IMG/VR virus record: IMGVR_UViG_3300024503_000015
Span: 124,001-188,000 of that record
Direction: 5' to 3' (one strand)
Length of the DNA stretch: 64,000 nt
Part shown: positions 17,422 through 39,170 of the stretch, in pieces
Position numbering within the stretch: the first letter of the stretch is position 1
How the letters are laid out: each line of letters begins with the position of its first letter
Notes under the pieces: model-generated
Databases searched by the model: none
Told to the model about the DNA's origin: nothing
The model's input: only the letters and a program-made list of their open reading frames with translations
Position numbers and translations under genes: made by a program

Positions 17422-19365
17422 ATGGCGTACACAATAAACCGATGGGACGGAACAGCGATTGCAGTAATCGAAGACGGTACCGTCAATCAAAGTTTAGACA
17501 TTAAGTTAATCGGTAAAAATTATGCCGGCTACGGTGAAATTCAGAACGAAAACACAGTATTCATGTTGGAGAATTTCGCAAGCGGAACAAGTCCAGCAAA
17601 CGCAGTACGTGGACAGTTATGGTACGATAGCGGTAATAAAAAGTTAAAGATTTATACAGGCGATATAGTCGGTGCTGTAAAGCAATGGAAGCAAATTGGC
17701 GGAGCAGAATACGGCAGCACAGAACCAAGTTATCCTAACAACGGTGATTTTTGGTTTGATGTAAATCGAGATCAACTTAAAGTAAGAAACGGAGATAGTT
17801 GGCTAGCAATCGGACCTCAAAGTGCTGGTGCTGGCGTAACGCAAATGGTTTCTAAGCAAGTTCGTGGATTCCCTGTAGGCAGTACAACTCCTCAAACTTA
17901 TTCTATCATTATTGCTAATATTAATGATATTCCTGTTTATATTACTTCTAGAGAAGAATTTACACTAGATACTAGCGACCCTGATTCTATTATTGTTGGT
18001 TTTAATCTAATTAAGAAAGGTTTAACACTACAAGAAGTAGACGATACAACCGGTGTCAGCGGAACTCCAACATACTTATATTGGGGTACATCTAGTAACG
18101 CATTACGACTAGGCGGATTCCTAGCATCAGATTATGTACGTTCAGGTAGTTCAAACTTTACAGCCACAGTTCGTTTTAGCGATTTAGGCTATACCGTAGG
18201 CGACAGTAACGACCTGGCAGTATTCATTGAAACAGGTACAGAGCCAGTAATTCAAAATACTACAGGTCCCAGAGTTTATTTTAGAGTTAGAGACGGTTCA
18301 GATGTTAAGAACCCATTAACAATTAATGCAACTAAACTTGAACCAGGTGTTGATAACACATTTAGTATCGGTACTAGTCTTAAAAAATGGAAAGAAGTTT
18401 ATGCTACAAACTTCTACGGTATTGCAGATAATGCAAATGCACTTCAAGTAGAAGCAGGAGTTTATCGTGTAGCCAGCACAAGTGCAGGTGTTAATACTAT
18501 TGCCGCTCGCGACAGCAGTGGTAATTTAACAGCAAATACATTTAATGGTAACGCTACTAGTGCTACTAAATTAGCAACTATTAGAACTATTAACGGTGTA
18601 AACTTTGATGGTACTACAAATATTATTATCGAAGACGATACAAAAGTTAGAATAGACGGTAGTACAATGACTGGCTATTTGACTTTAAATGGCGATCCAA
18701 CATCATTAAATCATGCCGCTACAAAAAACTATGTTGATGCACAGTTTGGTGTAGGCGGTGTATTAAGTATTGCAAGAGGTGGTTCTGGTGCAAGCACAGC
18801 CGCTAATGCTAGATCTAACTTAGACGTTCCAACACGCACAGGTGGAGACGCCAGTGGTACATGGAACATTAACATTTCTGGATCAGCCGCACAATTAAAC
18901 GGATATGCAAGTTCAACATCTGCGACAGGCGATACTATTGCTAGACGAGATAGTAGTGGTAATTTAACTGCTAACGTGTTTAGCGGTACTGCTACTTCAG
19001 CACGTTACGCTGACTTGGCAGAAAAGTATATTCCAGATAACAATTACGAAGTTGGAACAGTTGTAATGGTAGGCGGCGAAAAAGAAGTCACTGCGTGTAC
19101 ATTTGGCTCACGTGCAATCGGCGCAATATCTGGTAACCCTGCTTATATGATGAACAGCGGCTTAGAAGGCGGCGTATATGTTGCACTAAAAGGTCGTGTT
19201 CCAGTTAAAGTAACTGGCCGTGTTAAGAAAGGTGATCGCATGATTGCTAGTGAAGGCGGTGTTGCTATAGCAGGTCAATTCCACTCAAACGCAGATGTAT
19301 TTGCCATTGCGTTAGAATCAAACGATAATATAGATATTAAAATAGTGGAGTGTTTAATTCTTTAA
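17422..19365 (+). CDS. Tail fibre protein, 647 aa
   Basis: Shared N-terminal module; internal repeat TIAxRDSSGNLTANxFxGxATSA present twice; DPTSLNHAATKNYVD repeat; C-terminal ARYADLAEKY...GTVV..GGEKEVT domain typical of fibre tips/chaperones. Confidence 0.75.
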   Translation: MAYTINRWDGTAIAVIEDGTVNQSLDIKLIGKNYAGYGEIQNENTVFMLENFASGTSPANAVRGQLWYDSGNKKLKIYTGDIVGAVKQWKQIGGAEYGSTEPSYPNNGDFWFDVNRDQLKVRNGDSWLAIGPQSAGAGVTQMVSKQVRGFPVGSTTPQTYSIIIANINDIPVYITSREEFTLDTSDPDSIIVGFNLIKKGLTLQEVDDTTGVSGTPTYLYWGTSSNALRLGGFLASDYVRSGSSNFTATVRFSDLGYTVGDSNDLAVFIETGTEPVIQNTTGPRVYFRVRDGSDVKNPLTINATKLEPGVDNTFSIGTSLKKWKEVYATNFYGIADNANALQVEAGVYRVASTSAGVNTIAARDSSGNLTANTFNGNATSATKLATIRTINGVNFDGTTNIIIEDDTKVRIDGSTMTGYLTLNGDPTSLNHAATKNYVDAQFGVGGVLSIARGGSGASTAANARSNLDVPTRTGGDASGTWNINISGSAAQLNGYASSTSATGDTIARRDSSGNLTANVFSGTATSARYADLAEKYIPDNNYEVGTVVMVGGEKEVTACTFGSRAIGAISGNPAYMMNSGLEGGVYVALKGRVPVKVTGRVKKGDRMIASEGGVAIAGQFHSNADVFAIALESNDNIDIKIVECLIL

Positions 19366-20207
19366 ACAGCCATATCTGCTTTAATAGCAGGATCTGGATT
19401 ATAGTTTTCCAACATAAAATCGTCGACTACATAGTCGGCGATTTTTTTTCCTACTGTAATAAACAATGTTGGTAATTGCTTTGGGGTGCGGGCTAGTTGT
19501 TCATTGACTGCGTCAATATGATTATTGTAGATGTGACAGTCTCCCCCAGTCCATACAAAATCGCCTACTTTTAAATTACACTCTCTAGCAATAATATGTG
19601 TAAGTAAACTGTAACTGGCAATGTTAAATGGTACACCTAAGAACATATCGCAACTACGTTGATATAGTTGACAACTTAGATACCCGTCAGTAACATTAAA
19701 TTGACTTAATATATGACATGGCGGTAATGCCATTTGATCGAGCTCTCCGGGATTCCATGCAGTCATAATATGTCTACGACTACCTGGATCTTTCTTAATC
19801 CCTTCGATTAAATTCTCAAGTTGATCGATGTCGGAGTTTAGAAAAGGTCGTTGCCAATGACGCCATTGTACTCCGTAAACCCGACCTAGATCGCCTTCGA
19901 ACTTTGCTTTTGGTTTCCAGTAATCTGCTTCTGCATTAGCAGTCCAAATAGTATTTTTACTGGAGTCTCTTGTGCCATGTAGGATTTCTGCAAGACGGCG
20001 TTCGTCGCCGCTACCTTCTAAAAACCAAAGAAGTTCCGAAACTACTGCTCGCCAAGCGAGCTTCTTAGTAGTAACTGCGGGAAAACCTTCTTGCAGATTA
20101 AAACGCATTTGATAACCAAACACGCTACGAGTACCTACACCCGTCCTATCAGTCTTGTTCTTTCCGTTTTCTAGTATTTGTTTTAGTGCTTCGTGATATT
20201 GTTTCAT
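19362..20207 (-). CDS. thyA: Thymidylate synthase
   Basis: DRTGVGT, catalytic PPCH, YQRSCDMFLGVPFNIASY, GDCHIYNNH. Confidence 0.97.
   Translation of the reverse strand: MKQYHEALKQILENGKNKTDRTGVGTRSVFGYQMRFNLQEGFPAVTTKKLAWRAVVSELLWFLEGSGDERRLAEILHGTRDSSKNTIWTANAEADYWKPKAKFEGDLGRVYGVQWRHWQRPFLNSDIDQLENLIEGIKKDPGSRRHIMTAWNPGELDQMALPPCHILSQFNVTDGYLSCQLYQRSCDMFLGVPFNIASYSLLTHIIARECNLKVGDFVWTGGDCHIYNNHIDAVNEQLARTPKQLPTLFITVGKKIADYVVDDFMLENYNPDPAIKADMAV
19416..19449 (+). terminator. Rho-independent terminator of the structural operon, inside the thyA coding sequence on the other strand
   Basis: AAAATCGTCGACT-ACAT-AGTCGGCGATTTT stem (one G-U pair) followed by a T-run, 50 nt after the fibre stop. 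Confidence 0.65.
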
Positions 20208-27079: not shown

Positions 27080-27528
27080 GAAACCTCAGACTTGCCTTCG
27101 GCAATCTTTTTAACATTAATAAATCCAGCACCTCTATCTGACATATCGATGCCCTCTTCGCTGGCTACATTTTTGCATAGTTCTCTAAACCAACGATCCA
27201 CAATTTCTTCATCAGGATCGCCATCAAATCCATAACCCGCTTGTTTTAATTGTACTACAAATTCATCGTTCCAGTCAATCTCGAAGAAACCATTCTTTAA
27301 GTTATCTTTATTGACATGTGTCTCCAAAACAGCGACCCAAGGTTCTCCTTTGGCTGTAGCACGGTCTTTTGGAGTCATTTTAGCCAATTCTTCTTCGCGT
27401 TTGGCTACTGCTTCTTTGGCTGTTGCTTCTTCAGCACGGGCAAGTGCTTCTGCACGTTCTTTTTCTAGACGTTCTTTTTCTGCTTCTAATTTGTCTATGC
27501 CAAATAATTTTTTAATAATTGCTTTCAT
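27076..27528 (-). CDS. Hypothetical protein (start MKAIIKK)
   Basis: GGGGG RBS before the ATG at 27528; N-terminal coiled coil. Confidence 0.55.
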   Translation of the reverse strand: MKAIIKKLFGIDKLEAEKERLEKERAEALARAEEATAKEAVAKREEELAKMTPKDRATAKGEPWVAVLETHVNKDNLKNGFFEIDWNDEFVVQLKQAGYGFDGDPDEEIVDRWFRELCKNVASEEGIDMSDRGAGFINVKKIAEGKSEVS

Positions 27529-28195
27529 GTTTCCCCCATACCCGCGATTGCGGATAAAAAAATGCGTTTTCGTTTTGCCCCATATCCCAAATAATACTGC
27601 CCATTGTATTTCTTTCATTTAGTGGCAACGATTGAATAAAAGTATTTGTACTATAACGAACACCTTTAGTTATTGGTTTAACTTCGTGTACCCAAAGAGG
27701 ATCTGCTGGAAAAATCATAGCATCTCCTTTATTCAATTTAACTTCGTATCTGCCATTCCAAAAAGTAAATTCGCCACCTTCATAGTCGTCATTTAATGAA
27801 ATAGTACAACTGGCGTGAATCATTTCCTCCCAATCCACATGAGGATGTATCCATTCGCCGACTTCGTATTTCATAAGTCGGTGCATGTGGGAAAATCTTA
27901 AAGATTTTTTTAATGCTGTAGTGTGAAACGCTTTAAACTCTTCTAGATATGTTATCCAATCTTCGATAATTTTATTTGTATGATTATGTACTACTAAAAA
28001 GTTTTCTGTATCAGGAATTAACTCTACTCTTTTAAAAGTAGAAGTAGTCATTTTATTAGTTACGGCGTGTATGCAACTTTCTTGAACCGCACTGGCAGAA
28101 CGCAATTCGTATTCGTCAATTAACGAATTGCATTGGTCTTCTGTTAATGCGTTTCTAACAACAAAAATTAAATCGGATAACTTTATATCTTCCAT
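27512..28195 (-). CDS. 2OG-Fe(II) oxygenase (prolyl-4-hydroxylase-like)
   Basis: HxD (HVD), LNDDYEGGEF, distal HEV, RYS 2-oxoglutarate ligand motif. Confidence 0.88.
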   Translation of the reverse strand: MEDIKLSDLIFVVRNALTEDQCNSLIDEYELRSASAVQESCIHAVTNKMTTSTFKRVELIPDTENFLVVHNHTNKIIEDWITYLEEFKAFHTTALKKSLRFSHMHRLMKYEVGEWIHPHVDWEEMIHASCTISLNDDYEGGEFTFWNGRYEVKLNKGDAMIFPADPLWVHEVKPITKGVRYSTNTFIQSLPLNERNTMGSIIWDMGQNENAFFYPQSRVWGKHESNY

Positions 28196-29059
28196 TTATG
28201 TTCCCCACTCATTTTTAAAGAGTGGAACTTGTAATCTATCGCTGTAGCGTAAACCGTTTTTCATTGCTAGTTCCGCTACACGCCTGTTGTTAAGAGTATA
28301 GACACTTTCAACGCCACCCACGGGCATAAGATATATAGGACCGGTAAAACCATTTTCTCTATAAATGTCAGCAGTTTCAATTGCTTCCTCCGCATCTTCT
28401 TCTGTGGCCACTACAAATTTAAGATATGTATGACCGTATTCTTCGTATTCACAAACTACGTCTGGACGAATTGCTTCGTGACGTTCTTCACCGGAGCAAC
28501 TTAATTTAGCACTAACACTAAATGTAACTTCTCGCCAAAAATCTTTATCGCTGTGATATTTCCATGTGTGCAGATATTGCTTGAACTCGTCGGTGAGTTT
28601 TTGAGTACCATTCGTTTCAAATGTAATCTCTTTTAAGTTTGTCATTTTTGGATGGTCGAGCAAGTCTGGATACGCTCGTTGCCATCCAAGCAAAGGTTCC
28701 CCTCCGGTAATGACCAAGTGTTCGTCTCGCCATTCGTTGAAGGGTAGAATCTCTGCGATCCTGTCTGCGATGGCGTCTGAAGTGAGCATTGGACTAAGAT
28801 CCTTAAAGCGAGGATCCCAACTAGCATAACTATCACAGCCCGTAGATACCAAAGGAAGTTCTTCATATTTTTTATATGGGGTTCGTTCATGTTGGATTGC
28901 AATATCTTCAACTTCTGTACTTAGTTCACCTTTTGGTAATCCAAAGCCAGCACATTTAAAGTTACAACCAAATGTTCTCAAGAAAACAGACGGTACACCC
29001 ATGTAACGTCCTTCGCCTTGAATACTATAAAATAATTCTGCAATTTTTAATTTGCTCAT
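28196..29059 (-). CDS. queE: 7-carboxy-7-deazaguanine synthase (radical SAM)
   Basis: ELFYSIQGEG, FLRTFGCNFKC...(insert)...CDS, ITGGEPLL, FETNGT, SDRLQVPLF. Confidence 0.92.
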   Translation of the reverse strand: MSKLKIAELFYSIQGEGRYMGVPSVFLRTFGCNFKCAGFGLPKGELSTEVEDIAIQHERTPYKKYEELPLVSTGCDSYASWDPRFKDLSPMLTSDAIADRIAEILPFNEWRDEHLVITGGEPLLGWQRAYPDLLDHPKMTNLKEITFETNGTQKLTDEFKQYLHTWKYHSDKDFWREVTFSVSAKLSCSGEERHEAIRPDVVCEYEEYGHTYLKFVVATEEDAEEAIETADIYRENGFTGPIYLMPVGGVESVYTLNNRRVAELAMKNGLRYSDRLQVPLFKNEWGT

Positions 29060-29843: not shown

Positions 29844-30049
29844 GTCTCCAACCATTTATCAAGAATATTTACAGCATCATTGAAATCGATACCATATACT
29901 TCTGCACTGATAACATTGTCTTTGATTTGTATATCAAACGGAACAGTTCCGTTAAATCGAAAATCTTCGGGAACATCTGTCTCTACAATATACTTGTGTA
30001 GATTTTTTGCTCTATTAATTAAATTAGTCGCCATGTCTACTGAATTCAT
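29834..30049 (-). CDS. Hypothetical protein, 71 aa
   Basis: Coupled ATGA overlap with folE. Confidence 0.45.
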   Translation of the reverse strand: MNSVDMATNLINRAKNLHKYIVETDVPEDFRFNGTVPFDIQIKDNVISAEVYGIDFNDAVNILDKWLETCK

Positions 30050-30744
30050 CTTGGTGCAAACTCCTGTTGTAGTTTAATGTTATCAAAGAACTCTTTCTTT
30101 GTACCAGCATCGTCTTTGAACGCACCTTTAAGTACAGTAGTTTGAGTTAATGAACTATGTGCCATAATGCCACGATTCTCACAGCATCCATGAACTGCCT
30201 GAATATAAACGCCAATATCACTTGCGCCAGTGGCCTTTTCAATTTCTCTGGCTATGTCGTTACACAATTCTTCCTGTAAGGTACCACGACGAGCGCACCA
30301 TTGCGCGATTCGTGTGTATTTTGACAGCCCAATGAGTTTTTGGGCGGCGATGATTCCGATGTAGGCAACACCAGAAACAGGCTGATGATGATGACTACAC
30401 ATACTACGAAGCTCACTCCTAACCACCAACATACCCTCATAACGATCTTCGCTATCGTTAGGAAACGCTGTTGCATCTGGTGCTGGTTCATATCTTCCTG
30501 CCATTATTTCGTTAAAGTACATTTTTGCTAATCGTTTCGCTGTACCGTGCGAGTTAGGATCTGTCTCTCTGTCAATAAGAAGTTTGTCTAAAACACTTTC
30601 AAATGCCTCAGTTGCTTCTTTGATTAGTTGTTCTTTGACTAGATCAGATTCGATGTATTCGCTGATGTTATCTCCTGCCCAGAATCTTTTTCCGTCTAGG
30701 ACCATCTTTTCGCGAATCGCTTGTGCTAAATTTTTTTCTGACAT
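30046..30744 (-). CDS. folE: GTP cyclohydrolase I
   Basis: SMCSHHHQP, GLSKYTRI, RRGTLQE, AVHGCCENRG zinc-ligand motifs. Confidence 0.95.
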   Translation of the reverse strand: MSEKNLAQAIREKMVLDGKRFWAGDNISEYIESDLVKEQLIKEATEAFESVLDKLLIDRETDPNSHGTAKRLAKMYFNEIMAGRYEPAPDATAFPNDSEDRYEGMLVVRSELRSMCSHHHQPVSGVAYIGIIAAQKLIGLSKYTRIAQWCARRGTLQEELCNDIAREIEKATGASDIGVYIQAVHGCCENRGIMAHSSLTQTTVLKGAFKDDAGTKKEFFDNIKLQQEFAPR

Positions 30745-31211: not shown

Positions 31212-31380
31212 TCCAAAGTTCTTGTGCTCTGCGCTTATAGTCTTCTAATTCCCACACGGCTAATTTTTCACGAAATACTTCTTCGCTTAATCCGTGCCAG
31301 CCGATACAGTCTCCTGTAGGACTACGACCACAACCGCAAGTTCCAATTTTCTTTCCTTCTTCAGGTACTCTTACTTGCAT
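31180..31380 (-). CDS. Small CDGSH-type iron-sulfur/zinc-finger protein
   Basis: CGCGRSPTGDCIGWH resembles C-x-C-x2-S...C-D-G-S-H; start MQVRV at 31380. Confidence 0.6.
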   Translation of the reverse strand: MQVRVPEEGKKIGTCGCGRSPTGDCIGWHGLSEEVFREKLAVWELEDYKRRAQELWNDSCTSGRSE

Positions 31381-31744
31381 TTTTATAATTTCCTTTACTT
31401 GGTATAACGTGACGAACCCCGCCACGAGGGTCTTCCATATCACCCTTGCGTCTAGGGATCATGTGTATATGAGGATACATTACTGTTTGGCCAGCAGTCT
31501 CGCCACAGTTTTGTCCGACATTAAAAGCGTCCCAACGTTCAGATTGGACACCATCGAACCCGAACTTGTATGCTCCTTTGAAACATTCGACGATGTTGGT
31601 AAAACGTTCATAGGTTGGCACAAAAAGCAAATGTCCTTCCGTAACTGGGTAGGCATCGTTGAAGACCCAATAGTCTTTTGTTCTGTACTCGATACTAGTC
31701 CATGGTGCTCTGCGTTCATCTAGTGCCCTTTCTAAATCAGTCAT
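31361..31744 (-). CDS. HIT-family nucleotide hydrolase
   Basis: YPVTEGHLLFVP, GQTVMYPHIHMIPR histidine triad; start MTDLE at 31744. Confidence 0.9.
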   Translation of the reverse strand: MTDLERALDERRAPWTSIEYRTKDYWVFNDAYPVTEGHLLFVPTYERFTNIVECFKGAYKFGFDGVQSERWDAFNVGQNCGETAGQTVMYPHIHMIPRRKGDMEDPRGGVRHVIPSKGNYKNASKST

Positions 31745-32292
31745 AACCAAAATTCTTCCCAAGGATAAACAAGCCAACAATCTTCTTGTCGCTTGTCTAC
31801 GGTCCAAACATGATAGTCTGGATCTTTAAACTCACTGCCGTAATTATGTGTTAATACAGCAAAACGAACATTGTCTCCCCATACTTGATTCCATGCTTCA
31901 TCGTTAGGAAAACAACCACTGGGCCAATCTTTCTTAATCCAATTAAGAGTAGATCCTTGATCGTTAATATCGTCTACAATTAAGATTTTCTTTTTAAGAC
32001 GTTCTAAATGTTTGTGATCGCCCCAAATGTGCCTTTCGTCATTGGGAACAACTCCCAAGGCATCTTCGGCCATCCAAAGATTACTTTCGCAATCGTTTTT
32101 ATTATCGCGAAGGCTGACATTAAGTGTGTGCATCTTAATGCCAGTATATTGACTTAGTAAGTTAGCCGGAACAAGACCACCGCGTGTAATACCTACAATA
32201 TAGTCAGGCCTCCAATTATGTTCAGACATTTGGCGAGCAATTTCTAAACATGCGCCTTCAACTTGTGACCAACTGTAGTATACTTTCTTCAT
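31741..32292 (-). CDS. Type I phosphoribosyltransferase (xanthine/guanine PRTase-like)
   Basis: IVGITRGGLVPA and PRPP loop LIVDDINDQGST; C-terminal VYPWE; start MKKVY at 32292. Confidence 0.85.
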   Translation of the reverse strand: MKKVYYSWSQVEGACLEIARQMSEHNWRPDYIVGITRGGLVPANLLSQYTGIKMHTLNVSLRDNKNDCESNLWMAEDALGVVPNDERHIWGDHKHLERLKKKILIVDDINDQGSTLNWIKKDWPSGCFPNDEAWNQVWGDNVRFAVLTHNYGSEFKDPDYHVWTVDKRQEDCWLVYPWEEFWL

Positions 32293-32525
32293 GCAGTTAA
32301 CCCATAGGCCAATGATTGACATTCTTCTTTAGTCATAAAGAAATTATAAGTTTGTGTACCAACAACTTCACCGTCTTTAAGACTTTCTTGAACCATATCG
32401 ATACTAAACAAACCTTTAGGGCTTAGTACTTCGTGTTTCTTTAATGTTAGCCTAAAACCGGCGTGTTCTTTGACAACCATTTCTTTATAAGTATCTCTAA
32501 CTGATTCATGTAGTTCCATCATCAT
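32289..32525 (-). CDS. Hypothetical protein, 78 aa
   Basis: Co-oriented ORF. Confidence 0.5.
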   Translation of the reverse strand: MMMELHESVRDTYKEMVVKEHAGFRLTLKKHEVLSPKGLFSIDMVQESLKDGEVVGTQTYNFFMTKEECQSLAYGLTA

Positions 32526-32958: not shown

Positions 32959-33376
32959 TTGGTATCCATTTATTATTAACGAGAAATCCCCATTCTCTCT
33001 TTTGCGGACCTGGCATAAAAAGTGTCCAACACTCTACGTTGGGATCAATTTCAATTCTATGAAAACTGTTGGCACTACAAATTCTAAAGTGTCCAGGCTT
33101 TCTCCATTTGGCAATTTCACAGACCTTTACTCCCTGGCTGTTAAATTGAGGAATCCATTCCCAATAGCCACCTTTTAGAATAAGTGTGGCATAAGGCCAT
33201 GGGTGATCATGCACATCATCTGGATCACCTTTATGAAACTTGTGTAAGAATACATTAAATGGAAACCATTTACGATCCTTTAAAAATAGATAATAACGTG
33301 TAAGTAACGGCTCGTCACAGGTACGATCCATAATAATACGCTTGCGACCGAGACGTTCTAACAGTTTTAATATCAT
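32921..33376 (-). CDS. Cupin-fold metal-binding protein
   Basis: LHKFH...VHDHPW...LKGGYWE...FHRI...WTLF double-stranded beta-helix pattern. Confidence 0.7.
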   Translation of the reverse strand: MILKLLERLGRKRIIMDRTCDEPLLTRYYLFLKDRKWFPFNVFLHKFHKGDPDDVHDHPWPYATLILKGGYWEWIPQFNSQGVKVCEIAKWRKPGHFRICSANSFHRIEIDPNVECWTLFMPGPQKREWGFLVNNKWIPNELYLQSRKRNT

Positions 33377-34446
33377 ACAAGTCTTTCTAAGAGTCCATTT
33401 GCAGAAAAGAAATTTTCAGTTAAGTCTTGAGTTTGTTTTCTAAGTTGTGGTAAAAACTTTTCATAGTTATCCATATACTGGATAATCTTTGCACATATTT
33501 CTGGACGGTGTGCTTTATATGCTTCGAAACTTTCAGTCCATTCACTAGGATACTTAAAAGTATCATAGCCCATTTCACTGTAACTAAGTCTATCTGGCAC
33601 CATAGGAATAGCATCTACAACAGCGCCTTCATACCAACTAATCCCTAATGTCTCTTGTAAGTTTGCAGAGAACACTAATTTCGATTCGCCTAACAAGTTA
33701 TGATATTCATTTTTTGTTAGTTGTTGATCCTGACAGACTACGAACTCGTACTGTGGCAAGTGTTCTTTTAAATCTCTAAAAATTTCAACTTGCTTCTCGG
33801 GTGCGATGCGATGAGGGAAAAGAATTAAATCACGTTTTTTCATCCCTTTATATGGAGTTAATGTATCTTCCATATACTCCATTGGCCAACCTGTGCGTAC
33901 AATTTTTCCTTTATCGATATATGATGCTTTTGCAGTATCGTAATCTATGTTTAAAAGATTATGACAAAACATTTCAATATGGAATGTTGTAGCAAAGTAG
34001 TTATGATCTATAGCATGAAAGAAACTCTTTTCAGCATTTCTGACCCAAGGAGCATCGCCAATTAGACGACCTAAAAAGTCCTGTGGATCGTAACTACCGG
34101 CATGCCATAGTGCGTGAATAGTTACAGGAATCTGTAACAGTTCACTCATATACTTTAGGTTGATGATACCAGGGTGCCAAGCATCAGTAAAGATGAAGTG
34201 ATCATTAGGAGCCACTGATCCGGCGCAAAACAACCTACCCATTTGCTCAACTTGAGCAGACTTGTATATATTGGTGCCACCAAAATTAAGAAAAGCACCA
34301 GGAGTAGTGGCTGAAGGAATATCCGTAGGCCCAGATAAAACTTGAACATCGTGTCCTCTCTTTCTCAGGATAGCCGGTAGGTGGGTCTTCCACTGCGCTG
34401 TATAGCGTGTTTCTACCGGCTCAAGGTCTACTAAGTAGACGGTCAT
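33373..34446 (-). CDS. GT-B glycosyltransferase
   Basis: C-terminal FPHRIAPEKQ and FSANLQETLGISWYEG resemble the GT-B R/K and E-x7-E donor-binding motifs. Confidence 0.75.
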   Translation of the reverse strand: MTVYLVDLEPVETRYTAQWKTHLPAILRKRGHDVQVLSGPTDIPSATTPGAFLNFGGTNIYKSAQVEQMGRLFCAGSVAPNDHFIFTDAWHPGIINLKYMSELLQIPVTIHALWHAGSYDPQDFLGRLIGDAPWVRNAEKSFFHAIDHNYFATTFHIEMFCHNLLNIDYDTAKASYIDKGKIVRTGWPMEYMEDTLTPYKGMKKRDLILFPHRIAPEKQVEIFRDLKEHLPQYEFVVCQDQQLTKNEYHNLLGESKLVFSANLQETLGISWYEGAVVDAIPMVPDRLSYSEMGYDTFKYPSEWTESFEAYKAHRPEICAKIIQYMDNYEKFLPQLRKQTQDLTENFFSANGLLERLV

Positions 34447-34676
34447 TGGCGACCATTCCTGTAGTTGTTATTGTACCCGTTGTTATTACGGGGACGATTT
34501 TCAAATCGTCTGTCGTTGTTATAACGACGAGGACGCTTAGACGCCTCGTAAGCCTGCCAAGTTTTACTTTGGCGGTTATACAAGTCTGCCTCATTGTAAG
34601 GCAGAAGGTTGAATCTGCAAAAATCTAGCAGATTGTCAAGATCGTCAAAAATTTGAACGACTTCTTTTTTCATCAT
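34443..34676 (-). CDS. Hypothetical protein, Arg/Asn-rich tail
   Basis: Co-oriented, coupled overlap. Confidence 0.5.
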   Translation of the reverse strand: MMKKEVVQIFDDLDNLLDFCRFNLLPYNEADLYNRQSKTWQAYEASKRPRRYNNDRRFENRPRNNNGYNNNYRNGRQ

Positions 34677-34684
34677 TGTTTCCT

Positions 34685-35080
34685 TTAGTATTTGATGAAT
34701 GAACCATTTTCTCCGTCTTCGGAGACCTCAATCCAAATCTCGCGATTTGGATACTTCTTGCTAATGATGTCATGTAATTCGTCAGACATCATTTCACAAC
34801 TCTTGTAGTCAAGGCTTATAGTGGCACCTTGACCATTATACAACGACTCGAGCCATCGTTTGAATTGGATGAATTCGATGTCCCTGTCATTGTGTTGCAC
34901 ACTGATCCACACCCTGAAATGAAAGATGTGGCGATGAGGGTGACCCAAAAACGATACGTCATATTCGTCTCCTGTTGCTAGATTAGGATCTGTTAGTGCC
35001 GCAGGATACTTATGGATACCTTCTTTGCGGAAAGTTACCCAGATCATTTTGTTTGGTCTAATGTCTTGTTTGATAATCAT
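34685..35080 (-). CDS. QueD-like T-fold protein with LxxxHRHxF motif (DpdL-like candidate)
   Basis: FLGHPHRHIFHF in place of QueD CxxxHGH; SCEM substrate-Glu motif; start MIIKQ at 35080. Confidence 0.7.
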   Translation of the reverse strand: MIIKQDIRPNKMIWVTFRKEGIHKYPAALTDPNLATGDEYDVSFLGHPHRHIFHFRVWISVQHNDRDIEFIQFKRWLESLYNGQGATISLDYKSCEMMSDELHDIISKKYPNREIWIEVSEDGENGSFIKY

Positions 35081-35616
35081 GTTGGTGTATCTTGAGTGTA
35101 CAAATCCCAATGAGTATACTTGTCTTTAGTCATTAGGCTTTGTAAATGATGTGTCCACACACCTGGATTTGTAGCACCCCAAGTTCGGTCATCCAGTTTG
35201 AGTGTGGCATTGTAGTTGAGTTGATTAATGTAGGGTAACTTGACACTAATCATAGGTACAAACTTGGGATATTCGTTATAAGCAGACTCTAGTACGCCTT
35301 CGATGTGTTCAACACCAAAGTCTAGAGCTACCCAATAGCCTGCTTTTAGACAGCCTATAATAACTTCGTCCCATGCTTTGTATTCTTCGTGTGAAATACT
35401 TTTAGGATTAAAACTTTGACTAGTGCCAAAGTAAATTTGTTTAATGCGTTTGTTTTCGTCTAAGTATGCTTGTGTGTCACCAGCAATACGTAGTATTTCT
35501 TCTAGCGGAGGAGTGCCTACTACAAATAGTGTATACATACCATAGCAAATAGTATGTTCGACTTCGTAGCCTGTAAAGTAGACAATGTCTTGTCTTTCTT
35601 CAGTGTTTAATCCCAT
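35077..35616 (-). CDS. Uncharacterised protein embedded in the deazaguanine cluster, 179 aa
   Basis: Coupled to both neighbours; no motif recognised. Confidence 0.6.
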   Translation of the reverse strand: MGLNTEERQDIVYFTGYEVEHTICYGMYTLFVVGTPPLEEILRIAGDTQAYLDENKRIKQIYFGTSQSFNPKSISHEEYKAWDEVIIGCLKAGYWVALDFGVEHIEGVLESAYNEYPKFVPMISVKLPYINQLNYNATLKLDDRTWGATNPGVWTHHLQSLMTKDKYTHWDLYTQDTPT

Positions 35617-36497
35617 TTAATATAACCTCTGCTATAACCATTTGGACGATCCACACCATCCGCAAATGCTTGTTGCCATTCTGTGTTACGATTATAACCT
35701 TTTGTCCAGAAAGAATCAACCTCTAGTTTACCGTTTTCAATCATCCAACGTGCTTCAAACATAGCACCAATAAATTCTTCTGTTCTTGGACTTGGTTTAA
35801 CTGTAGTAACAGCCTTCCAAAGTTGTTGTTGTGCTTCTTCTTTACTTACTGCTTTACCAACAGCATCAATGATTACTGCATTGTTATTTAGATTAATGTC
35901 GGTACCTAGTTGATATTTTCCAGATAAATCTACTATCAAATCGTAACTGTCGGTAGTACCTAACAGTAACGCATCTCCCCAAAGTTCCTGATTACTAGAA
36001 CCTAGTACATCTACTTCAAGTTCTGGAAAATGATGTGCCAGGTTATTAAAAACTACCCATGCAAGGAAACCACTACCTAGGATTAAGCATTTACCATTTT
36101 GTCTACGTTCAAAAAGAGTATACGCTTGTCTAATACAGTTAACACCACAGGCCACTGGTTCTAAAATGTAACGTGGATGTAGTTCTAAAACTGTTACAAA
36201 CTCACCGTCACGACAGTTGTAATAATCTGCGTATGCTGGTTCGCCGCGGGTAGCAACATAATCGCCTACTTTAACACCTAATACACTGGCACCGACTTTA
36301 GTTACGATTCCTAGACCTTCGTGACCTTGCATGTGTAGTGGTAAAGGTCCAAAGTTGCCCTGCATCATATCTATGTCACTGCGACATACACCAGTCATAA
36401 CTGCTTTAACTTCAATTTCAGTTGACGTAGGTTCTGGCTTTGCATATTCTACTTCTTCAAAGTAACCTTGTCCAGTTGTTTGTAGACAGCGTGTCAT
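35607..36497 (-). CDS. Zn-dependent medium-chain dehydrogenase/reductase
   Basis: GVCRSD, GHEGLG catalytic Zn ligands, ILGSGFLA Rossmann; no structural-Zn Cys loop; start MTRCL at 36497. Confidence 0.85.
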   Translation of the reverse strand: MTRCLQTTGQGYFEEVEYAKPEPTSTEIEVKAVMTGVCRSDIDMMQGNFGPLPLHMQGHEGLGIVTKVGASVLGVKVGDYVATRGEPAYADYYNCRDGEFVTVLELHPRYILEPVACGVNCIRQAYTLFERRQNGKCLILGSGFLAWVVFNNLAHHFPELEVDVLGSSNQELWGDALLLGTTDSYDLIVDLSGKYQLGTDINLNNNAVIIDAVGKAVSKEEAQQQLWKAVTTVKPSPRTEEFIGAMFEARWMIENGKLEVDSFWTKGYNRNTEWQQAFADGVDRPNGYSRGYIKWD

Positions 36498-37372
36498 AGT
36501 TTTTCTATTCTTTCGTGTATCCAAAGGTCAATTTCTAACTGTACTTTCCAGTACTCGTCATTATTTAGGTTTTCTACAGCATCTTTAATCATATTTAGGT
36601 ACGCTTCTTCTGGACACCAGCCTAACTCAAATACATCTTTGGTATTATCTTGATTAATAAATGTAATAGCACTACGTTCAACAGTCATACTGCGCCAGTT
36701 AGCACGGCAGTTCCATTTAGAACCAAATCCAATGTGACACTGGTCGTCTACATCATAAGTTCCATTTGGGTTTACAGTACCATACTCTGTGCTTTCGATA
36801 TCTTTTAACAGCCATGATTGTATAGATGATTCGCCGTTAACTTTTTCTATGCGCCAGTCTGGATGTAGTGCAATATACAAACTTAATAAGTGTGGCATTA
36901 AGTCCCTACTAACTCCGCCAAATGCTAGTTTGCGTGTAGTAAACCAACTACCTGGGCTAGGAATACAGTTCTTTCTAATCCATTCGATGTCTACATTCTT
37001 TGCTACTTTAGCCTTTTCCTGTAATTCTGCAATATTGTCACGCCACATATTATTTTTAACCATCATAAATCGTGTGCGTGGAAATCTTTTACATAATTTA
37101 GCCCATTCGTTTCTATTAATCAGTCCAGGCTTTTCAATAAAGACAATTTTACTGATAGGAGCCAGTTTAACGGCTAATTCTAAATGCGTAAAATTTGGTG
37201 TGCAAATATGTACGGTGTCAAAAGACCCGTGAAGTAATATGGCTGGTTCTATACTAGGGAAGTCGGCATTTTTATTAATGTCTGTATCGACAGTACAAAC
37301 TTCATAACCTAATTGAGTTAGGACAGATTTATATAACTGTCCTATTCCCATTCCTACAACTAAACTTTTCAT
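36494..37372 (-). CDS. Gfo/Idh/MocA-family oxidoreductase
   Basis: VVGMGIG, VHICTPNFTH, FIEKP, GGVSRDLMPH. Confidence 0.87.
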   Translation of the reverse strand: MKSLVVGMGIGQLYKSVLTQLGYEVCTVDTDINKNADFPSIEPAILLHGSFDTVHICTPNFTHLELAVKLAPISKIVFIEKPGLINRNEWAKLCKRFPRTRFMMVKNNMWRDNIAELQEKAKVAKNVDIEWIRKNCIPSPGSWFTTRKLAFGGVSRDLMPHLLSLYIALHPDWRIEKVNGESSIQSWLLKDIESTEYGTVNPNGTYDVDDQCHIGFGSKWNCRANWRSMTVERSAITFINQDNTKDVFELGWCPEEAYLNMIKDAVENLNNDEYWKVQLEIDLWIHERIEKL

Positions 37373-37626
37373 CTATATGTTGGTAGTTCGTTAACACATT
37401 TAATAAGAGATCCGGATTGTTTGCCCGCTAATTGATGTAGCGCATAATCCGGAGAGGATACACAGGCTTCGTGCCCATTGAATTTATCTGCTAGGGCAAT
37501 GGTGTTGCCAGTTTCTGCAAATTTAATTACAAGATAGTAGTCGTTTGGACCCACGGCATCTGCCGTTTTATAAAACAAACCAAAACTTAATACTGCTAAA
37601 ACACCAATGCCTAGTAGTTTTTTCAT
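37369..37626 (-). CDS. Small exported protein, 85 aa
   Basis: Signal peptide MKKLLGIGVLAVLSFG; two Cys. Confidence 0.55.
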   Translation of the reverse strand: MKKLLGIGVLAVLSFGLFYKTADAVGPNDYYLVIKFAETGNTIALADKFNGHEACVSSPDYALHQLAGKQSGSLIKCVNELPTYR

Positions 37627-39170
37627 TTTACGCCTTCTTCGAGTTCGTCAAGTTTAGCAATTTCATCATCGGTAAATTCTTCACCGTGCTCTAATTGTAC
37701 ACTCTCTTCCTCTACTTCGTCAAACAGTTTGGCAAATTGTGTACTTGCGTTTACAGTCTTCTTACCTACTGCTCCGCGAGTTCCAATAATACTTTGCCAA
37801 AATTTATTATACTCTTCAACGACTTTGTCTGCTTCTGCACGACTACTAGTAGCAAAAATGGCTTCTACTACATCTTTAAAGAATAGTCTATCAAACCGTT
37901 CTTCTACTAACATAGCAGGAACAATGCCCAAATCGTATTGACGATTGGCTTCTTGTACAGCATTAATGTGCATCCAAACATTATGGCCCATTAAGATAGC
38001 GTAACTAAAACTATCCCACGAAGTTTTACCTTCCTTGCCAATCTTGTTTAGATCCCCGGGCCCGTAAATACAAACATCTTTAATTTGAACCCCGTCAATA
38101 ATTGGACTATTGTCAAAGTTTTTAAAATGTCCGTCCTGTACTACTGCATCGCGGAATAGTCTAGTATCTTTACTATATTTTTTATTATCGATACTAGGTA
38201 ACATTCTATATACCCACTTAGTTCTGTCTTGTGTTTCTGTTTGAACGTATACTTGTCCGTTTGCAGTTGCTAAGAATGGACTAGCACAGTCGAAACTAAT
38301 TGTAAAGTTAGGATTGTGATACTTGCGTACAGCACGTTGAATGTCTGTTAATAAACAAGCCCACTCTAATTTACTAGTACCTAAGAAGTGCATCCAGTCT
38401 TGTTTGCCCTGTTCAAGTAATCCGTCAAATCGTAATGCTACTAGGCGTTTTAATACCAAGTGTACATCACACATATTCTGACCACCCATGGCCCAACCGT
38501 TAAATGCACGGTCACCGTAGACAGTAGGATCGCAGTACTTCTTCATTCGGTCATACCAATCGTCTGCATCGGTATGATTTTCACCTTGGAGAACGTTTAA
38601 GAATTTACAATTACCATTGCGATTGTTTACAAACCAATCGTTGTTAATGTAAGTACCTTGAACTGCTTCTGCGTATGTAGTAATGCCTGTGGCTTTTTGT
38701 CCAGCAGGGCTACGAGCTACCCAAGCAGGGATATCAAGACACATACCATAGTCCATTAGACTATCCATCCACTTAAGAACCTGTTCACGTTTCTTTTGTG
38801 CTTTAGGACAGTTGGGATTCTTCCAATCGCCTTCCCATACACCTTTACCAATTTGGAAACCACCGGAGTCGCCTAGTACCCAACTAGTACTGCGATCTCT
38901 ATTACGAAACATATCTTCGCTGTGATCAACTTTGTTAAGGTCTAGATTAGCATGACCTGCACTATACAAGCAGTGGTCATAGTAGAACGCACCTTTTTCC
39001 GGTTCTAAGTAGTTTAGACTTTCTACTCCGTTTTTAAAACTAGCAGGAACTCTTGCCGGATCAACATAGTTTCCATATCTTTGTTTACCTATAAAGGTAC
39101 TATAGAAACCGCTAGTTGCCGGCAAAAAGTATGCGTAGTCGTTTTGTGTTGCGGTTAAATTTTTATTCAT
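37623..39170 (-). CDS. TGT/DpdA-like base-exchange transglycosylase
   Basis: GDSGGFQIG (TGT catalytic Asp motif), LDIP, NVLQG, GWAMGG, HFLG, SFDCASP, late GHN; no CxCxxC Zn cluster of tRNA TGTs visible. Confidence 0.82.
   Translation of the reverse strand: MNKNLTATQNDYAYFLPATSGFYSTFIGKQRYGNYVDPARVPASFKNGVESLNYLEPEKGAFYYDHCLYSAGHANLDLNKVDHSEDMFRNRDRSTSWVLGDSGGFQIGKGVWEGDWKNPNCPKAQKKREQVLKWMDSLMDYGMCLDIPAWVARSPAGQKATGITTYAEAVQGTYINNDWFVNNRNGNCKFLNVLQGENHTDADDWYDRMKKYCDPTVYGDRAFNGWAMGGQNMCDVHLVLKRLVALRFDGLLEQGKQDWMHFLGTSKLEWACLLTDIQRAVRKYHNPNFTISFDCASPFLATANGQVYVQTETQDRTKWVYRMLPSIDNKKYSKDTRLFRDAVVQDGHFKNFDNSPIIDGVQIKDVCIYGPGDLNKIGKEGKTSWDSFSYAILMGHNVWMHINAVQEANRQYDLGIVPAMLVEERFDRLFFKDVVEAIFATSSRAEADKVVEEYNKFWQSIIGTRGAVGKKTVNASTQFAKLFDEVEEESVQLEHGEEFTDDEIAKLDELEEGVK

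What the first reader, a model, noticed from the sequence alone, without database searches (positions are those of the whole stretch)
34685..35080. T-fold protein has LxxxHRHxF instead of the QueD CxxxHGH, and no QueC is in the cluster
Seen: FLGHPHRHIF, lacking the QueD catalytic Cys; no SGGxDS PP-loop (QueC) protein anywhere in the window. From memory of the literature (to verify), LxxxHRHxF marks the DpdL-type QueD paralog proposed to decarboxylate CDG to 7-deazaguanine. Inference: the pathway branches at CDG (dCDG or dDG) rather than preQ0, and true QueD activity comes from the host or elsewhere in the genome.
Basis: partly seen in the sequence, partly recalled or inferred. Interest (0 to 1): 0.62.

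Follow-up and report, generated by a model that had tools for sequence, protein, structure and literature searches.

The report
DpdL-type QueD paralog in phage
This gene of a river-water giant phage belongs to the published DpdL family, a QueD look-alike proposed (never proven) to turn the queuosine precursor CDG into 7-deazaguanine for the phage's DNA; the gene itself is ordinary, but its constant partners raise questions that can be tested.

Summary
Window 34685-35080 (- strand) encodes a 131-aa protein with L45-x3-H49-R50-H51-x-F53, and no SGGxDS motif occurs in any frame of the window.

The protein is a T-fold. Its AlphaFold model (pLDDT 92.6) matches E. coli QueD and PTPS best. It is 57% identical to the DpdL of Acidovorax phage ACP17 and 34% to that of Cellulophaga phage phiST, the two named in Cui et al. 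2023. It is therefore a new member of a known family, and that family's decarboxylase activity has never been shown.

- A true QueD (CRHLHGH, Pfam 95.7 bits) lies about 50 kb away in the same 270-kb phage record.
- A QueC-family PP-loop gene (SGGLDS plus a C-terminal Cys cluster) also lies in that record, about 120 kb away. It forms a cassette with an unknown ORF. Two near-complete DpdL-bearing relatives lack it, so it is accessory.

The conserved core in 80 relatives is Pol, clamp, TGT-like DpdA, a 179-aa unknown, DpdL and a GT4-like glycosyltransferase, followed by FolE and QueE and often by a purine phosphoribosyltransferase and a HIT protein. The GT4 gene lies within 3 kb of DpdL in six cultured phage groups. 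The final base may therefore be more than plain 7-deazaguanine.

The parts
34685..35080 (-). DpdL-family T-fold protein, 131 aa (QueD paralog; proposed CDG decarboxylase)
   Evidence: ORF. AF2 model pLDDT 92.6. Foldseek top hit is E. coli QueD 4NTK, E 6e-5, TM 0.59-0.70. VIA Z is 11.7 for PTPS and 10.7 for QueD. 57% identical to ACP17 DpdL and 34% to phiST DpdL. phrog_17812 at 5e-34.
34922..34948 (-). LGHPHRHIF, the LxxxHRHxF signature that replaces the CxxxHGH of QueD
   Evidence: Conserved in 125 of 150 cluster representatives. Defined as the DpdL signature in PMC10516641.
35077..35616 (-). Unknown 179-aa protein whose stop overlaps the DpdL start (ATGA)
   Evidence: ATGA overlap read from the sequence. 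Present next to DpdL in 76 of 80 related loci. Homologue in ACP17 (ASD50402), just upstream of its dpdA, at 3e-10. No match in Pfam, NCBIfam, PHROGs or PADLOC.
34443..34676 (-). Unknown basic 77-aa protein between DpdL and the glycosyltransferase
   Evidence: Present in 63 of 80 related loci at +0.4 kb from DpdL. No family match.
33373..34446 (-). GT4/GT-B-like glycosyltransferase, 357 aa, a conserved partner of DpdL
   Evidence: 49% identical to Phosso 'glycosyltransferase', 41% to PA5oct EST35_0317 and 36% to ACP17 ASD50404. Four of 5 family members hit PF00534 at 5.5e-6. Eighteen of the 23 phage records with a homologue are DpdL phages, with the gene within 3 kb of DpdL. Present in 64 of 80 related loci.
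37623..39170 (-). DpdA-like DNA-guanine transglycosylase (TGT superfamily), 515 aa
   Evidence: DSGGFQ, LQG, HFLG and SFDCA motifs. hhalign against ACP17/BUCT-ZZ01 DpdA gives E 1.8e-4 over 179 columns. 33% identical to PA5oct EST35_0316. Atlas feature hit to a TGT-like cluster at 0.93. No Pfam TGT hit. Present in 74 of 80 related loci.
35607..36524 (-). Zn-ADH-like oxidoreductase (accessory to the module)
   Evidence: PF08240 ADH_N at 5e-12. Present in 19 of 80 related loci, always together with the next gene. BFVD holds a 459-aa protein named 'Alcohol dehydrogenase, N-terminal' that contains a DpdL domain.
36494..37372 (-). Gfo/Idh/MocA-type NAD-binding oxidoreductase (accessory)
   Evidence: PF01408 at 1.9e-5, 25.8 bits against a cut-off of 24. 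Present in 19 of 80 related loci.
30046..30744 (-). FolE, GTP cyclohydrolase I (first step towards CDG)
   Evidence: PF01227 at 1.4e-38. NCBIfam FolE models match at 109-135 bits, all below their curated cut-offs of 162-202 bits.
28196..29059 (-). QueE-like radical-SAM CDG synthase
   Evidence: phrog_2076 'QueE-like' at 2e-54 over the full length. NCBIfam QueE models at 1e-10 to 1e-13, below their cut-offs.
31741..32322 (-). Purine (xanthine/guanine-type) phosphoribosyltransferase
   Evidence: PF00156 at 2e-13 and NF006613 xanthine PRTase at 1.4e-12. Of the 10 phage records with a homologue, 6 are DpdL phages (phiST group, BUCT-ZZ01). Weak homologue in PA5oct next to QueE. Present in 36 of 80 related loci.
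31361..31807 (-). HIT-family nucleotide hydrolase/transferase
   Evidence: PF01230 at 32.8 bits against a cut-off of 21.5. Present in 26 of 80 related loci, next to the PRTase.

Best explanation
The ORF is a member of the DpdL family. DpdL is a QueD/PTPS-type T-fold protein that keeps the three metal-binding histidines (H23, H49, H51) and the purine/pterin-anchoring glutamate (E96). It has Leu where QueD has its catalytic Cys, an Arg between the two motif histidines, and its own conserved SCE and SEDGENG motifs.

The gene sits in the 7-deazaguanine DNA-modification module of a riverine jumbo phage. FolE and QueE (both in the window) and a canonical QueD (about 50 kb away) would make CDG from GTP. 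DpdL is proposed to remove the 7-carboxyl group and give 7-deazaguanine. The TGT-like DpdA, 2.5 kb upstream, would then exchange this base for guanine in phage DNA, protecting it from restriction.

Shown here: the fold, the motifs, family membership, the gene content and the conserved synteny. Inferred: the decarboxylase activity (proposed in Cui et al. 2023, never demonstrated), the substrate, and the final base in the DNA.

The confidence given is for the whole chain. Family membership alone is about 0.95. CDG decarboxylation as the activity is about 0.45.
For: - Motif and ORF.
- Homology to the two DpdLs named in the literature: ACP17 57% at 2e-36 and phiST 34% at 6e-9 (PMC10516641).
- T-fold with QueD/PTPS as nearest solved structures.
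- PF01242 is the commonest weak Pfam hit among family members: 5 of 40, best 0.0017.
- Residue conservation.
- phiST, which carries DpdL, replaces all G by dDG.
- FolE, QueE and DpdA-like lie in the cluster. QueD is in this genome and in 5 of 5 relatives.
- No QueF and no QueC lie within the module.
- PA5oct, which has the same module, resists G-site restriction enzymes (PMC12191111).
- The family is large and constrained: more than 8000 clusters at 90% identity, and 2025 at 50% with E <= 1e-3.
Against: - No enzyme activity has ever been shown. dpdL plus dpdA of phiST and of ACP17 gave no dDG in E. coli.
- This genome also has a QueC-family gene that could draw CDG towards preQ0 or an amide.
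- The GT4-like partner, the 179-aa unknown and the PRTase/HIT genes have no role in the simple model.
- Sequence-only links to QueD are weak: no Pfam or NCBIfam hit for this protein, and hhalign probability of only 44%.
- The record is only about 71% complete.
Confidence: 0.6

Rival explanations
1. The module makes a further elaborated 7-deazaguanine, for example a glycosylated one, rather than plain dDG. DpdL supplies the core. The conserved GT4-like enzyme then decorates the base or the DNA. In some strains the ADH-like and Gfo/Idh/MocA oxidoreductases would tailor the sugar donor.
For: - The GT4-like gene lies within 3 kb of DpdL in Phosso, the PA5oct group, ACP17, BUDD/X1, BUCT-ZZ01 and BCSR5, and in 64 of 80 relatives.
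- Eighteen of the 23 phage records with a GT homologue are DpdL phages.
- The family hits Glycos_transf_1.
- The genome has only a canonical ThyA and no ThyX, so there is no sign of hydroxymethyl-pyrimidine acceptors.
- BFVD holds a protein that combines ADH_N and DpdL.
- The ACP17 dpdL+dpdA test, done without the GT, gave no dDG.
- The PA5oct modification is still unidentified.
Against: - 7-deazaguanine has no obvious hydroxyl to accept a sugar.
- phiST makes plain dDG and has no GT.
- Phage GTs often act on host surface glycans or on proteins.
- The window's own GT does not itself reach Pfam significance.
Confidence: 0.2
2. DpdL works in a nucleotide-level route. The phage PRTase joins CDG or DG to PRPP, as ToyH and TubE do in toyocamycin and tubercidin synthesis (from memory). 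DpdL acts on or beside the nucleotide, and 7-deaza-dGTP is then incorporated by the polymerase. DpdA would be secondary.
For: - Six of the 10 phage records with a homologue of this purine PRTase are DpdL phages, including phiST with 100% dDG. In BUCT-ZZ01, and weakly in PA5oct, the gene abuts QueE.
- The PRTase and HIT genes recur in the module, in 36 and 26 of 80 loci.
- DpdL is fused to or adjacent to nucleotide enzymes: dUTPase/DCD (P0381), an AAA kinase-like domain (BFVD A0A8S5V119), and MazG plus an AAA_18 ATPase in phiST.
Against: - A TGT-like DpdA is a core gene of the module, present in 74 of 80 loci.
- The PRTase is absent from ACP17, Phosso and many relatives at the sensitivity used.
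- The PRTase may simply recycle the guanine that DpdA releases.
- One YhhQ-family (Vut_1) fusion points to free bases instead.
Confidence: 0.12
3. In this phage CDG goes on to preQ0 or an amide through the QueC-family gene, and DpdL has a different, non-decarboxylase role such as base binding or delivery, or another pterin reaction.
For: - The QueC-family gene has an intact SGGLDS PP-loop and Cys cluster.
- It scores above the Pfam QueC cut-off and matches PHROG QueC-like at 1.2e-18.
- It coexists with DpdL in 4 of the 5 longest related records, including one that is 100% complete.
Against: - It is never near the module. It is always paired with an unknown 153-aa ORF, in 75 of 79 loci.
- It is absent from DpdL relatives that are 99% and 95% complete.
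- Its fold is no closer to QueC than to ThiI, YcfA, ArgG or Cap9, with Z between 12.2 and 13.2.
- There is no QueF.
- The cultured DpdL phages lack it.
Confidence: 0.08

Closest known systems
DpdL of Cellulophaga phage phiST (CGPG_00067 / gp040) and of Acidovorax phage ACP17 (ASD50405), Cui et al. 2023, NAR 51:9214
   Same: LxxxHRHxF signature, size of about 115-131 aa and T-fold. 57% identical to ACP17 and 34% to phiST. Co-encoded with FolE, QueD, QueE and a DpdA.
   Different: Here, as in ACP17 and PA5oct, the DpdA is a long TGT-like protein, not the 259-aa DpdA3 of phiST. A GT4-like gene and a 179-aa unknown are fixed partners. This genome also carries a QueC-family gene, which the published DpdL phages lack.
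QueD (6-carboxytetrahydropterin synthase), E. coli, PDB 4NTK
   Same: T-fold. Nearest solved structure by Foldseek, with VIA Z 10.7, rmsd 2.7 Å over 108 residues. Three His and the anchoring Glu are retained.
   Different: About 16-19% identity. The catalytic Cys is replaced by Leu and HGH by HRH. No Pfam PF01242 hit for this protein. A separate canonical QueD is encoded in the same genome.
PTPS (6-pyruvoyl-tetrahydropterin synthase), e.g. P. horikoshii 2DTT/2DJ6
   Same: Highest structural Z: 11.7, rmsd 2.3 Å over 93 residues.
   Different: PTPS uses a Cys/Asp/His triad (from memory) that DpdL lacks. The genomic context here is 7-deazaguanine synthesis, not biopterin synthesis.
The module of Pseudomonas jumbo phage PA5oct (EST35_0316-0322)
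   Same: Same order: Pol, clamp, DpdA-like, GT4-like, DpdL, then PRTase-like and QueE. The proteins are 33%, 41% and 54% identical. PA5oct DNA resists G-site restriction enzymes.
   Different: PA5oct has no homologue of the 179-aa ORF detected and no ADH/Gfo pair. Its modification has not been chemically identified.

Membership tests
DpdL (proposed CDG decarboxylase, Cui et al. 2023) | Signature LxxxHRHxF in place of the CxxxHGH of QueD | tested here: met
   L45-GHP-H49-R50-H51-I-F53. Conserved in the family.
DpdL (proposed CDG decarboxylase, Cui et al. 2023) | Sequence homology to the named DpdLs of phiST and ACP17 | tested here: met
   tblastn gives ACP17 57% at 2e-36 and phiST 34% at 6e-9, both over more than 90% of the query.
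DpdL (proposed CDG decarboxylase, Cui et al. 2023) | QueD/PTPS-like T-fold with three His and two Glu shared with QueD | tested here: met
   The AF2 model's top matches are QueD and PTPS. H23, H49, H51, E96 and E121 are conserved at 90% or more. Residue-by-residue equivalence to QueD is inferred and was not superposed.
DpdL (proposed CDG decarboxylase, Cui et al. 2023) | [quoted passage not shown] | tested here: inconclusive
   FolE, QueE and DpdA-like are in the cluster, and QueD is at C1:209559-210116. A divergent QueC-family gene is present at C1:36756-37355. It is absent from two near-complete relatives.
DpdL (proposed CDG decarboxylase, Cui et al. 2023) | Decarboxylates CDG to 7-deazaguanine; dDG in virion DNA | not testable with these tools
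   Not shown for any family member. The heterologous test in the paper was negative.
QueD (6-carboxytetrahydropterin synthase) | CxxxHGH motif with the catalytic Cys | tested here: not met
   Leu stands at the Cys position and HRH replaces HGH. None of the 137 motif-bearing representatives has Cys there.
QueD (6-carboxytetrahydropterin synthase) | Passes the Pfam PF01242 or TIGR03367 thresholds | tested here: not met
   No hit even at E <= 1. The genome's real QueD scores 95.7 bits.
QueC (preQ0 synthase), for the gene at G000:C1:36756-37355 | PP-loop SGGxDS plus a C-terminal Zn Cys cluster, and the family HMM | tested here: met
   SGGLDS and C171-x12-C184-x2-C187-x2-C190. Pfam QueC 28 bits against a cut-off of 22, over the C-terminal part only. 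PHROG 1550 at 1.2e-18 over the full length. It fails the NCBIfam equivalog TIGR00364 (21 bits against 150).
QueC (preQ0 synthase), for the gene at G000:C1:36756-37355 | Converts CDG to preQ0; linked to the other que/dpd genes | tested here: inconclusive
   The gene is never within 6-10 kb of the dpd/que genes and is always paired with an unknown ORF. Its structure is no closer to QueC than to other PP-loop enzymes. Activity is not testable here.
DpdA / TGT superfamily, for the 515-aa protein | TGT catalytic motifs (DSGGFQ, QG, LG, FDC; recalled from memory for bacterial TGT) and homology to a known phage DpdA | tested here: met
   The motifs are present and align with those of ACP17/BUCT-ZZ01 DpdA, hhalign E 1.8e-4 over 179 columns. 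PA5oct homologue against ACP17 DpdA gives BLASTP 0.002. The Pfam TGT model itself gives no hit.

The most novel reading that the evidence does not exclude
The plain FolE-QueD-QueE-DpdL-DpdA scheme may be incomplete. The unit that is actually conserved is DpdA, the 179-aa unknown, DpdL and a GT4-like glycosyltransferase, often with a purine PRTase and a HIT protein. This unit may make a guanine replacement not yet described, such as a sugar-bearing or otherwise extended 7-deazaguanine, or one supplied through a nucleotide route. That would explain why dpdL plus dpdA alone gave nothing in E. coli. In a sub-lineage that includes this phage, a QueC-like cassette could add a second branch from CDG.
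Probability: 0.2. Interest if true: 0.75.

Novelty: new member of a known kind. Interest (0 to 1): 0.4.

Why it matters
DpdL is the only candidate for the step that gives 7-deazaguanine, a base that fully replaces G in some phage genomes, and its activity has never been shown.

This window shows that the family is very common in freshwater viromes: more than 8000 clusters at 90% identity. It also shows that DpdL travels with a fixed set of partners that published tests left out: a TGT-like DpdA, a 179-aa unknown and a GT4-like transferase, often with a purine PRTase.

That gives a concrete reason for the negative heterologous experiments, and a short list of genes to add to them. Cultured phages with the same module (PA5oct, ACP17, Phosso) make this directly testable.

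The window also shows that 'DpdL phages lack QueC' is not a universal rule.

Tried and rejected
**Searches that did not link this protein to QueD by sequence**
- Pfam and NCBIfam scans of the protein gave no hit.
- A profile of 40 family members searched against PDB sequences found no QueD or PTPS, only chance hits such as bacterioferritin.
- hhalign against five phage QueDs was weak: probability 44%, C-terminal half only, from a poor QueD alignment.
- The QueD link therefore rests on the fold and on the paper's HHpred result.

**Searches on the other module genes**
- Megablast of the module against cultured phages found no match.
- The QueC-like protein and its profile found nothing in PDB sequences.
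- VIA-align ranking did not separate QueC from other PP-loop enzymes.
- Pfam TGT and QueF models found nothing in the genome. The DpdA call rests on motifs and profile comparison.

**Candidate module members that I rejected**
- The 2OG-Fe(II) oxygenase that abuts QueE end to end (28195/28196): its relatives are in marine cyanophages without DpdL.
- The 'cysteine dioxygenase' PHROG protein next to the GT: it is widespread in unrelated phages.
- The Phosso 'glycosylase' as a homologue of the 179-aa ORF: no similarity.

**Other ideas set aside**
- That the GT serves hydroxymethyl-pyrimidines: only a canonical ThyA is present and no ThyX.
- Contigs from RNA libraries tile the region, but they cannot show transcription.

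- No other genetic code was needed.
- Read laying was given 4000 letters.

Full report
**1. The observation**

The window is G000:C1:124001-188000 of a 270,181-bp IMG/VR virus record that CheckV rates about 71% complete. On the minus strand, 34685-35080 is an ORF of 131 aa starting at an ATG. That ATG overlaps the stop codon of the upstream 179-aa ORF in an ATGA.

Residues 44-53 read FLGHPHRHIF, at window 34922-34948. A six-frame regular-expression search finds no SGGxDS, and no looser PP-loop pattern, in the window.

**2. What the protein is**

Pfam and NCBIfam give nothing for it. PHROGs places it in an unannotated family, phrog_17812, at 5e-34.

tblastn against 50,697 phage records finds 28 records. 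Identities are 66% for Sinorhizobium phage Phosso, 59% for Rhizobium phage RHph_I1_18, 57% for Acidovorax phage ACP17, 54% for the PA5oct group and 34% for Cellulophaga phage phiST and its relatives. ACP17 and phiST are the two phages whose dpdL genes were named and tested in the 2023 paper.

The family is very large.
- The exhaustive search found 2025 clusters at 50% identity with E <= 1e-3.
- In a 40-sequence alignment H51, F53, S94 and E96 are invariant. H23, L45, H49, R50, E69, C95, E121, D122 and G126 are conserved at 90% or more.
- Among 150 representatives, 125 carry exactly L...HRH.F and none has Cys at the QueD position.

An AlphaFold2 model built on that alignment is confident, with pLDDT 92.6 and pTM 0.82.
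- Foldseek against the PDB ranks E. coli QueD (4NTK) first, at E 6e-5 and TM 0.59-0.70. PTPS, dihydroneopterin aldolase and QueF-like proteins follow.
- VIA-align gives Z 11.7 for P. horikoshii PTPS and Z 10.7 for QueD (rmsd 2.7 Å over 108 residues). Every listed hit is a T-fold protein.
- At sequence level the link to QueD is faint. Five of 40 members hit PF01242 weakly, and hhalign against five phage QueDs gives 44% probability.

The protein is thus a T-fold QueD paralog of the DpdL type. It is not a QueD.

**3. The rest of the pathway**

In the window, all on the minus strand, lie the following genes.
- QueE-like at 28196-29059 (PHROG 2e-54).
- FolE at 30046-30744 (PF01227 1.4e-38).
- A 515-aa protein at 37623-39170 with no Pfam hit. 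It carries DSGGFQ, LQG, HFLG and SFDCA. From memory, these are the TGT catalytic motifs. They align with the DpdA of ACP17 and BUCT-ZZ01 (hhalign E 1.8e-4 over 179 columns). The Atlas feature search also reaches a TGT-like cluster.

Outside the window, a canonical QueD lies at C1:209559-210116. It reads CRHLHGH and scores 95.7 bits against PF01242. QueD is present above the Pfam cut-off in 5 of 5 large related records. No QueF is found.

**4. The QueC question**

The genome holds exactly one SGGxDS, at C1:36795-36812. It lies in a 199-aa ORF at C1:36756-37355 that also has a C-terminal C-x12-C-x2-C-x2-C cluster.

Evidence that the ORF belongs to the QueC family:
- It passes the Pfam QueC cut-off, 28 bits against 22, on its C-terminal part.
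- It matches PHROG 1550 'QueC-like' over its full length at 1.2e-18, and the PADLOC QueC model at 6e-5.
- JGI annotates its 921 relatives as QueC.

Evidence that it is not a standard QueC:
- It fails the NCBIfam equivalog, 21 bits against 150.
- Its model (pLDDT 78.9) is about as close to Cap9, ThiI, YcfA and argininosuccinate synthase as it is to QueC.
- It is always preceded by an unknown ORF of about 153 aa, in 75 of 79 loci. It is never near the que or dpd genes.

Its distribution is patchy. Two DpdL-bearing relatives that are 99% and 95% complete lack it, and the positive control rang. Four of the five longest records that carry it also carry DpdL more than 100 kb away. None of the cultured DpdL phages has it.

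It is therefore an accessory cassette in a sub-lineage.

**5. Conserved neighbourhood**

In 80 IMG/VR relatives (DpdL 70-93% identical) the gene order is Pol, clamp, DpdA, the 179-aa ORF, DpdL, the 77-aa ORF and GT, followed by FolE and QueE. The table gives the counts. Most absences fall at truncated contig ends.

| Gene | Loci with the gene (of 80) |
|---|---|
| 179-aa ORF | 76 |
| DpdA-like | 74 |
| GT4-like | 64 |
| 77-aa ORF | 63 |
| FolE | 53 |
| PRTase | 36 |
| QueE | 34 |
| HIT | 26 |
| ADH-like + Gfo/Idh/MocA pair | 19 |

The 357-aa protein at 33373-34446 is 49%, 41% and 36% identical to the proteins next to DpdL in Phosso, PA5oct and ACP17. Four of five family members hit Glycos_transf_1. 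Of the 23 phage records with a homologue, 18 are DpdL phages, and there the gene lies within 3 kb of DpdL.

The purine PRTase at 31741-32322 has homologues in only 10 phage records. Six of these are DpdL phages: the phiST group, and BUCT-ZZ01 where the gene abuts QueE. PA5oct has a weak one next to QueE.

The 179-aa ORF has a homologue just upstream of the dpdA of ACP17.

Fusions point the same way: ADH_N-DpdL and AAA-DpdL in BFVD, DpdL-dUTPase and a Vut_1 (YhhQ family)-DpdL among the representatives. Each is a single case and may be an artefact of gene calling.

The genome has a canonical ThyA and no ThyX, so there is no hint of hydroxymethyl-pyrimidine acceptors for the GT.

**6. How it most likely works**

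GTP is converted to CDG by FolE, QueD and QueE. DpdL then removes the carboxyl group to give 7-deazaguanine, and DpdA exchanges this base for guanine in DNA.

The gene set, the fold and the conservation are shown here. The chemistry is inferred from the phiST case, where DNA is 100% dDG, and from the authors' proposal. That proposal failed its only experimental test, dpdL plus dpdA in E. coli. The constant partners found here, which that test left out, are a plausible reason for the failure. PA5oct, with the same module, has DNA that resists G-site restriction enzymes, and its modification has not been identified (PMC12191111).

The rivals are a decorated base made with the GT, a nucleotide-level route through the PRTase, and a preQ0 or amide branch through the QueC-like cassette. 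They are scored in the fields above.

**7. Origin**

The DNA polymerase is closest to those of Phosso (50%) and Agrobacterium phage Atu_ph07 (47%). The stretch is held by 14 DNA and 6 metatranscriptome runs labelled 'riverine metagenome'. Contigs from the RNA libraries tile 33373-37372 without mismatches, but DNA carry-over cannot be excluded.

**8. Verdict**

The gene is a new member of the published DpdL family.

The value added here has three parts: the genome-wide picture (QueD present, and an accessory QueC-like cassette present), the conserved DpdA / 179-aa / DpdL / GT4 unit with a recurrent PRTase, and the abundance of the family in freshwater viromes.

Noticed in passing
G000:C1:36310-37355 (outside the window; locus L002:587-1668): A two-gene cassette: an unknown ORF of 153-165 aa overlapping the start of a 199-aa QueC-family PP-loop protein. 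The pair is conserved in 75 of 79 IMG/VR loci while the other neighbours vary. Here it lies between very large ORFs (1105 and 1901 aa) of unknown function. Its function is unknown. Foldseek's top hit is the Cap9 chain of the Cap9-CdnD complex (PDB 9NTO).
   Followed up: partly
window 33373-34446, with L003:7837-8898, L004:7969-8997, L007:8363-9454 and L010:7379-8545: A GT4-like glycosyltransferase is a near-constant neighbour of DpdL in six cultured phage groups and in this lineage. phiST, the one phage shown to carry plain dDG, lacks it. I found no paper in the library that discusses this pairing.
   Followed up: partly
window 31361-32322: A xanthine/guanine-type phosphoribosyltransferase and a HIT protein recur in the module. 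PRTase homologues in cultured phages are concentrated in DpdL phages: 6 of 10 records. The enzyme could recycle guanine released by DpdA, or it could make a deazapurine nucleotide.
   Followed up: partly
BFVD A0A6J5LEZ6 and A0A8S5V119; P0381, P0307, P0318: DpdL domains appear fused to an ADH N-terminal domain, an AAA kinase-like domain, a dUTPase/dCTP-deaminase-like domain and a Vut_1 domain (YhhQ, a family of 7-deazapurine transporters, from memory). One shows a weak PAPS-reductase-like domain. Some of these may be merged gene calls.
   Followed up: no
L004:4778-5254, L005:5352-5981, L006:4919-5497, L010:3262-3729: The QueD proteins of ACP17, phiST, RHph_I1_18 and BUCT-ZZ01 read CxxxHGY, not CxxxHGH. 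The QueD of this genome reads CRHLHGH. DpdL phages may therefore use two QueD subtypes.
   Followed up: no
window 27512-28195: A 2OG-Fe(II) oxygenase abuts QueE end to end (28195/28196). Its nearest relatives (48% identity) are in marine Synechococcus phages S-B64 and S-H35, and it does not track DpdL.
   Followed up: yes
window 34333-34685: Contigs from three riverine runs (two RNA, one DNA) join 34333 to 34685. This skips the 77-aa ORF and the first codons of the GT. Only 30 letters lie on the shorter side, so it may come from a related strain or be spurious.
   Followed up: no
window 35607-37372: The ADH-like and Gfo/Idh/MocA oxidoreductase genes occur or are missing together, in 19 of 80 relatives. 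They are inserted between DpdA and the 179-aa ORF. They look like an optional sugar- or side-chain-tailoring pair.
   Followed up: partly
window 19362-20207: A canonical thymidylate synthase ThyA (376 bits, above the NCBIfam equivalog cut-off). No ThyX is found in the record.
   Followed up: yes
window 28196-29059: The QueE-like protein (287 aa) matches the phage QueE PHROG over its full length. It hits the NCBIfam QueE models only at its two ends and below their cut-offs, which suggests a large internal insertion.
   Followed up: no
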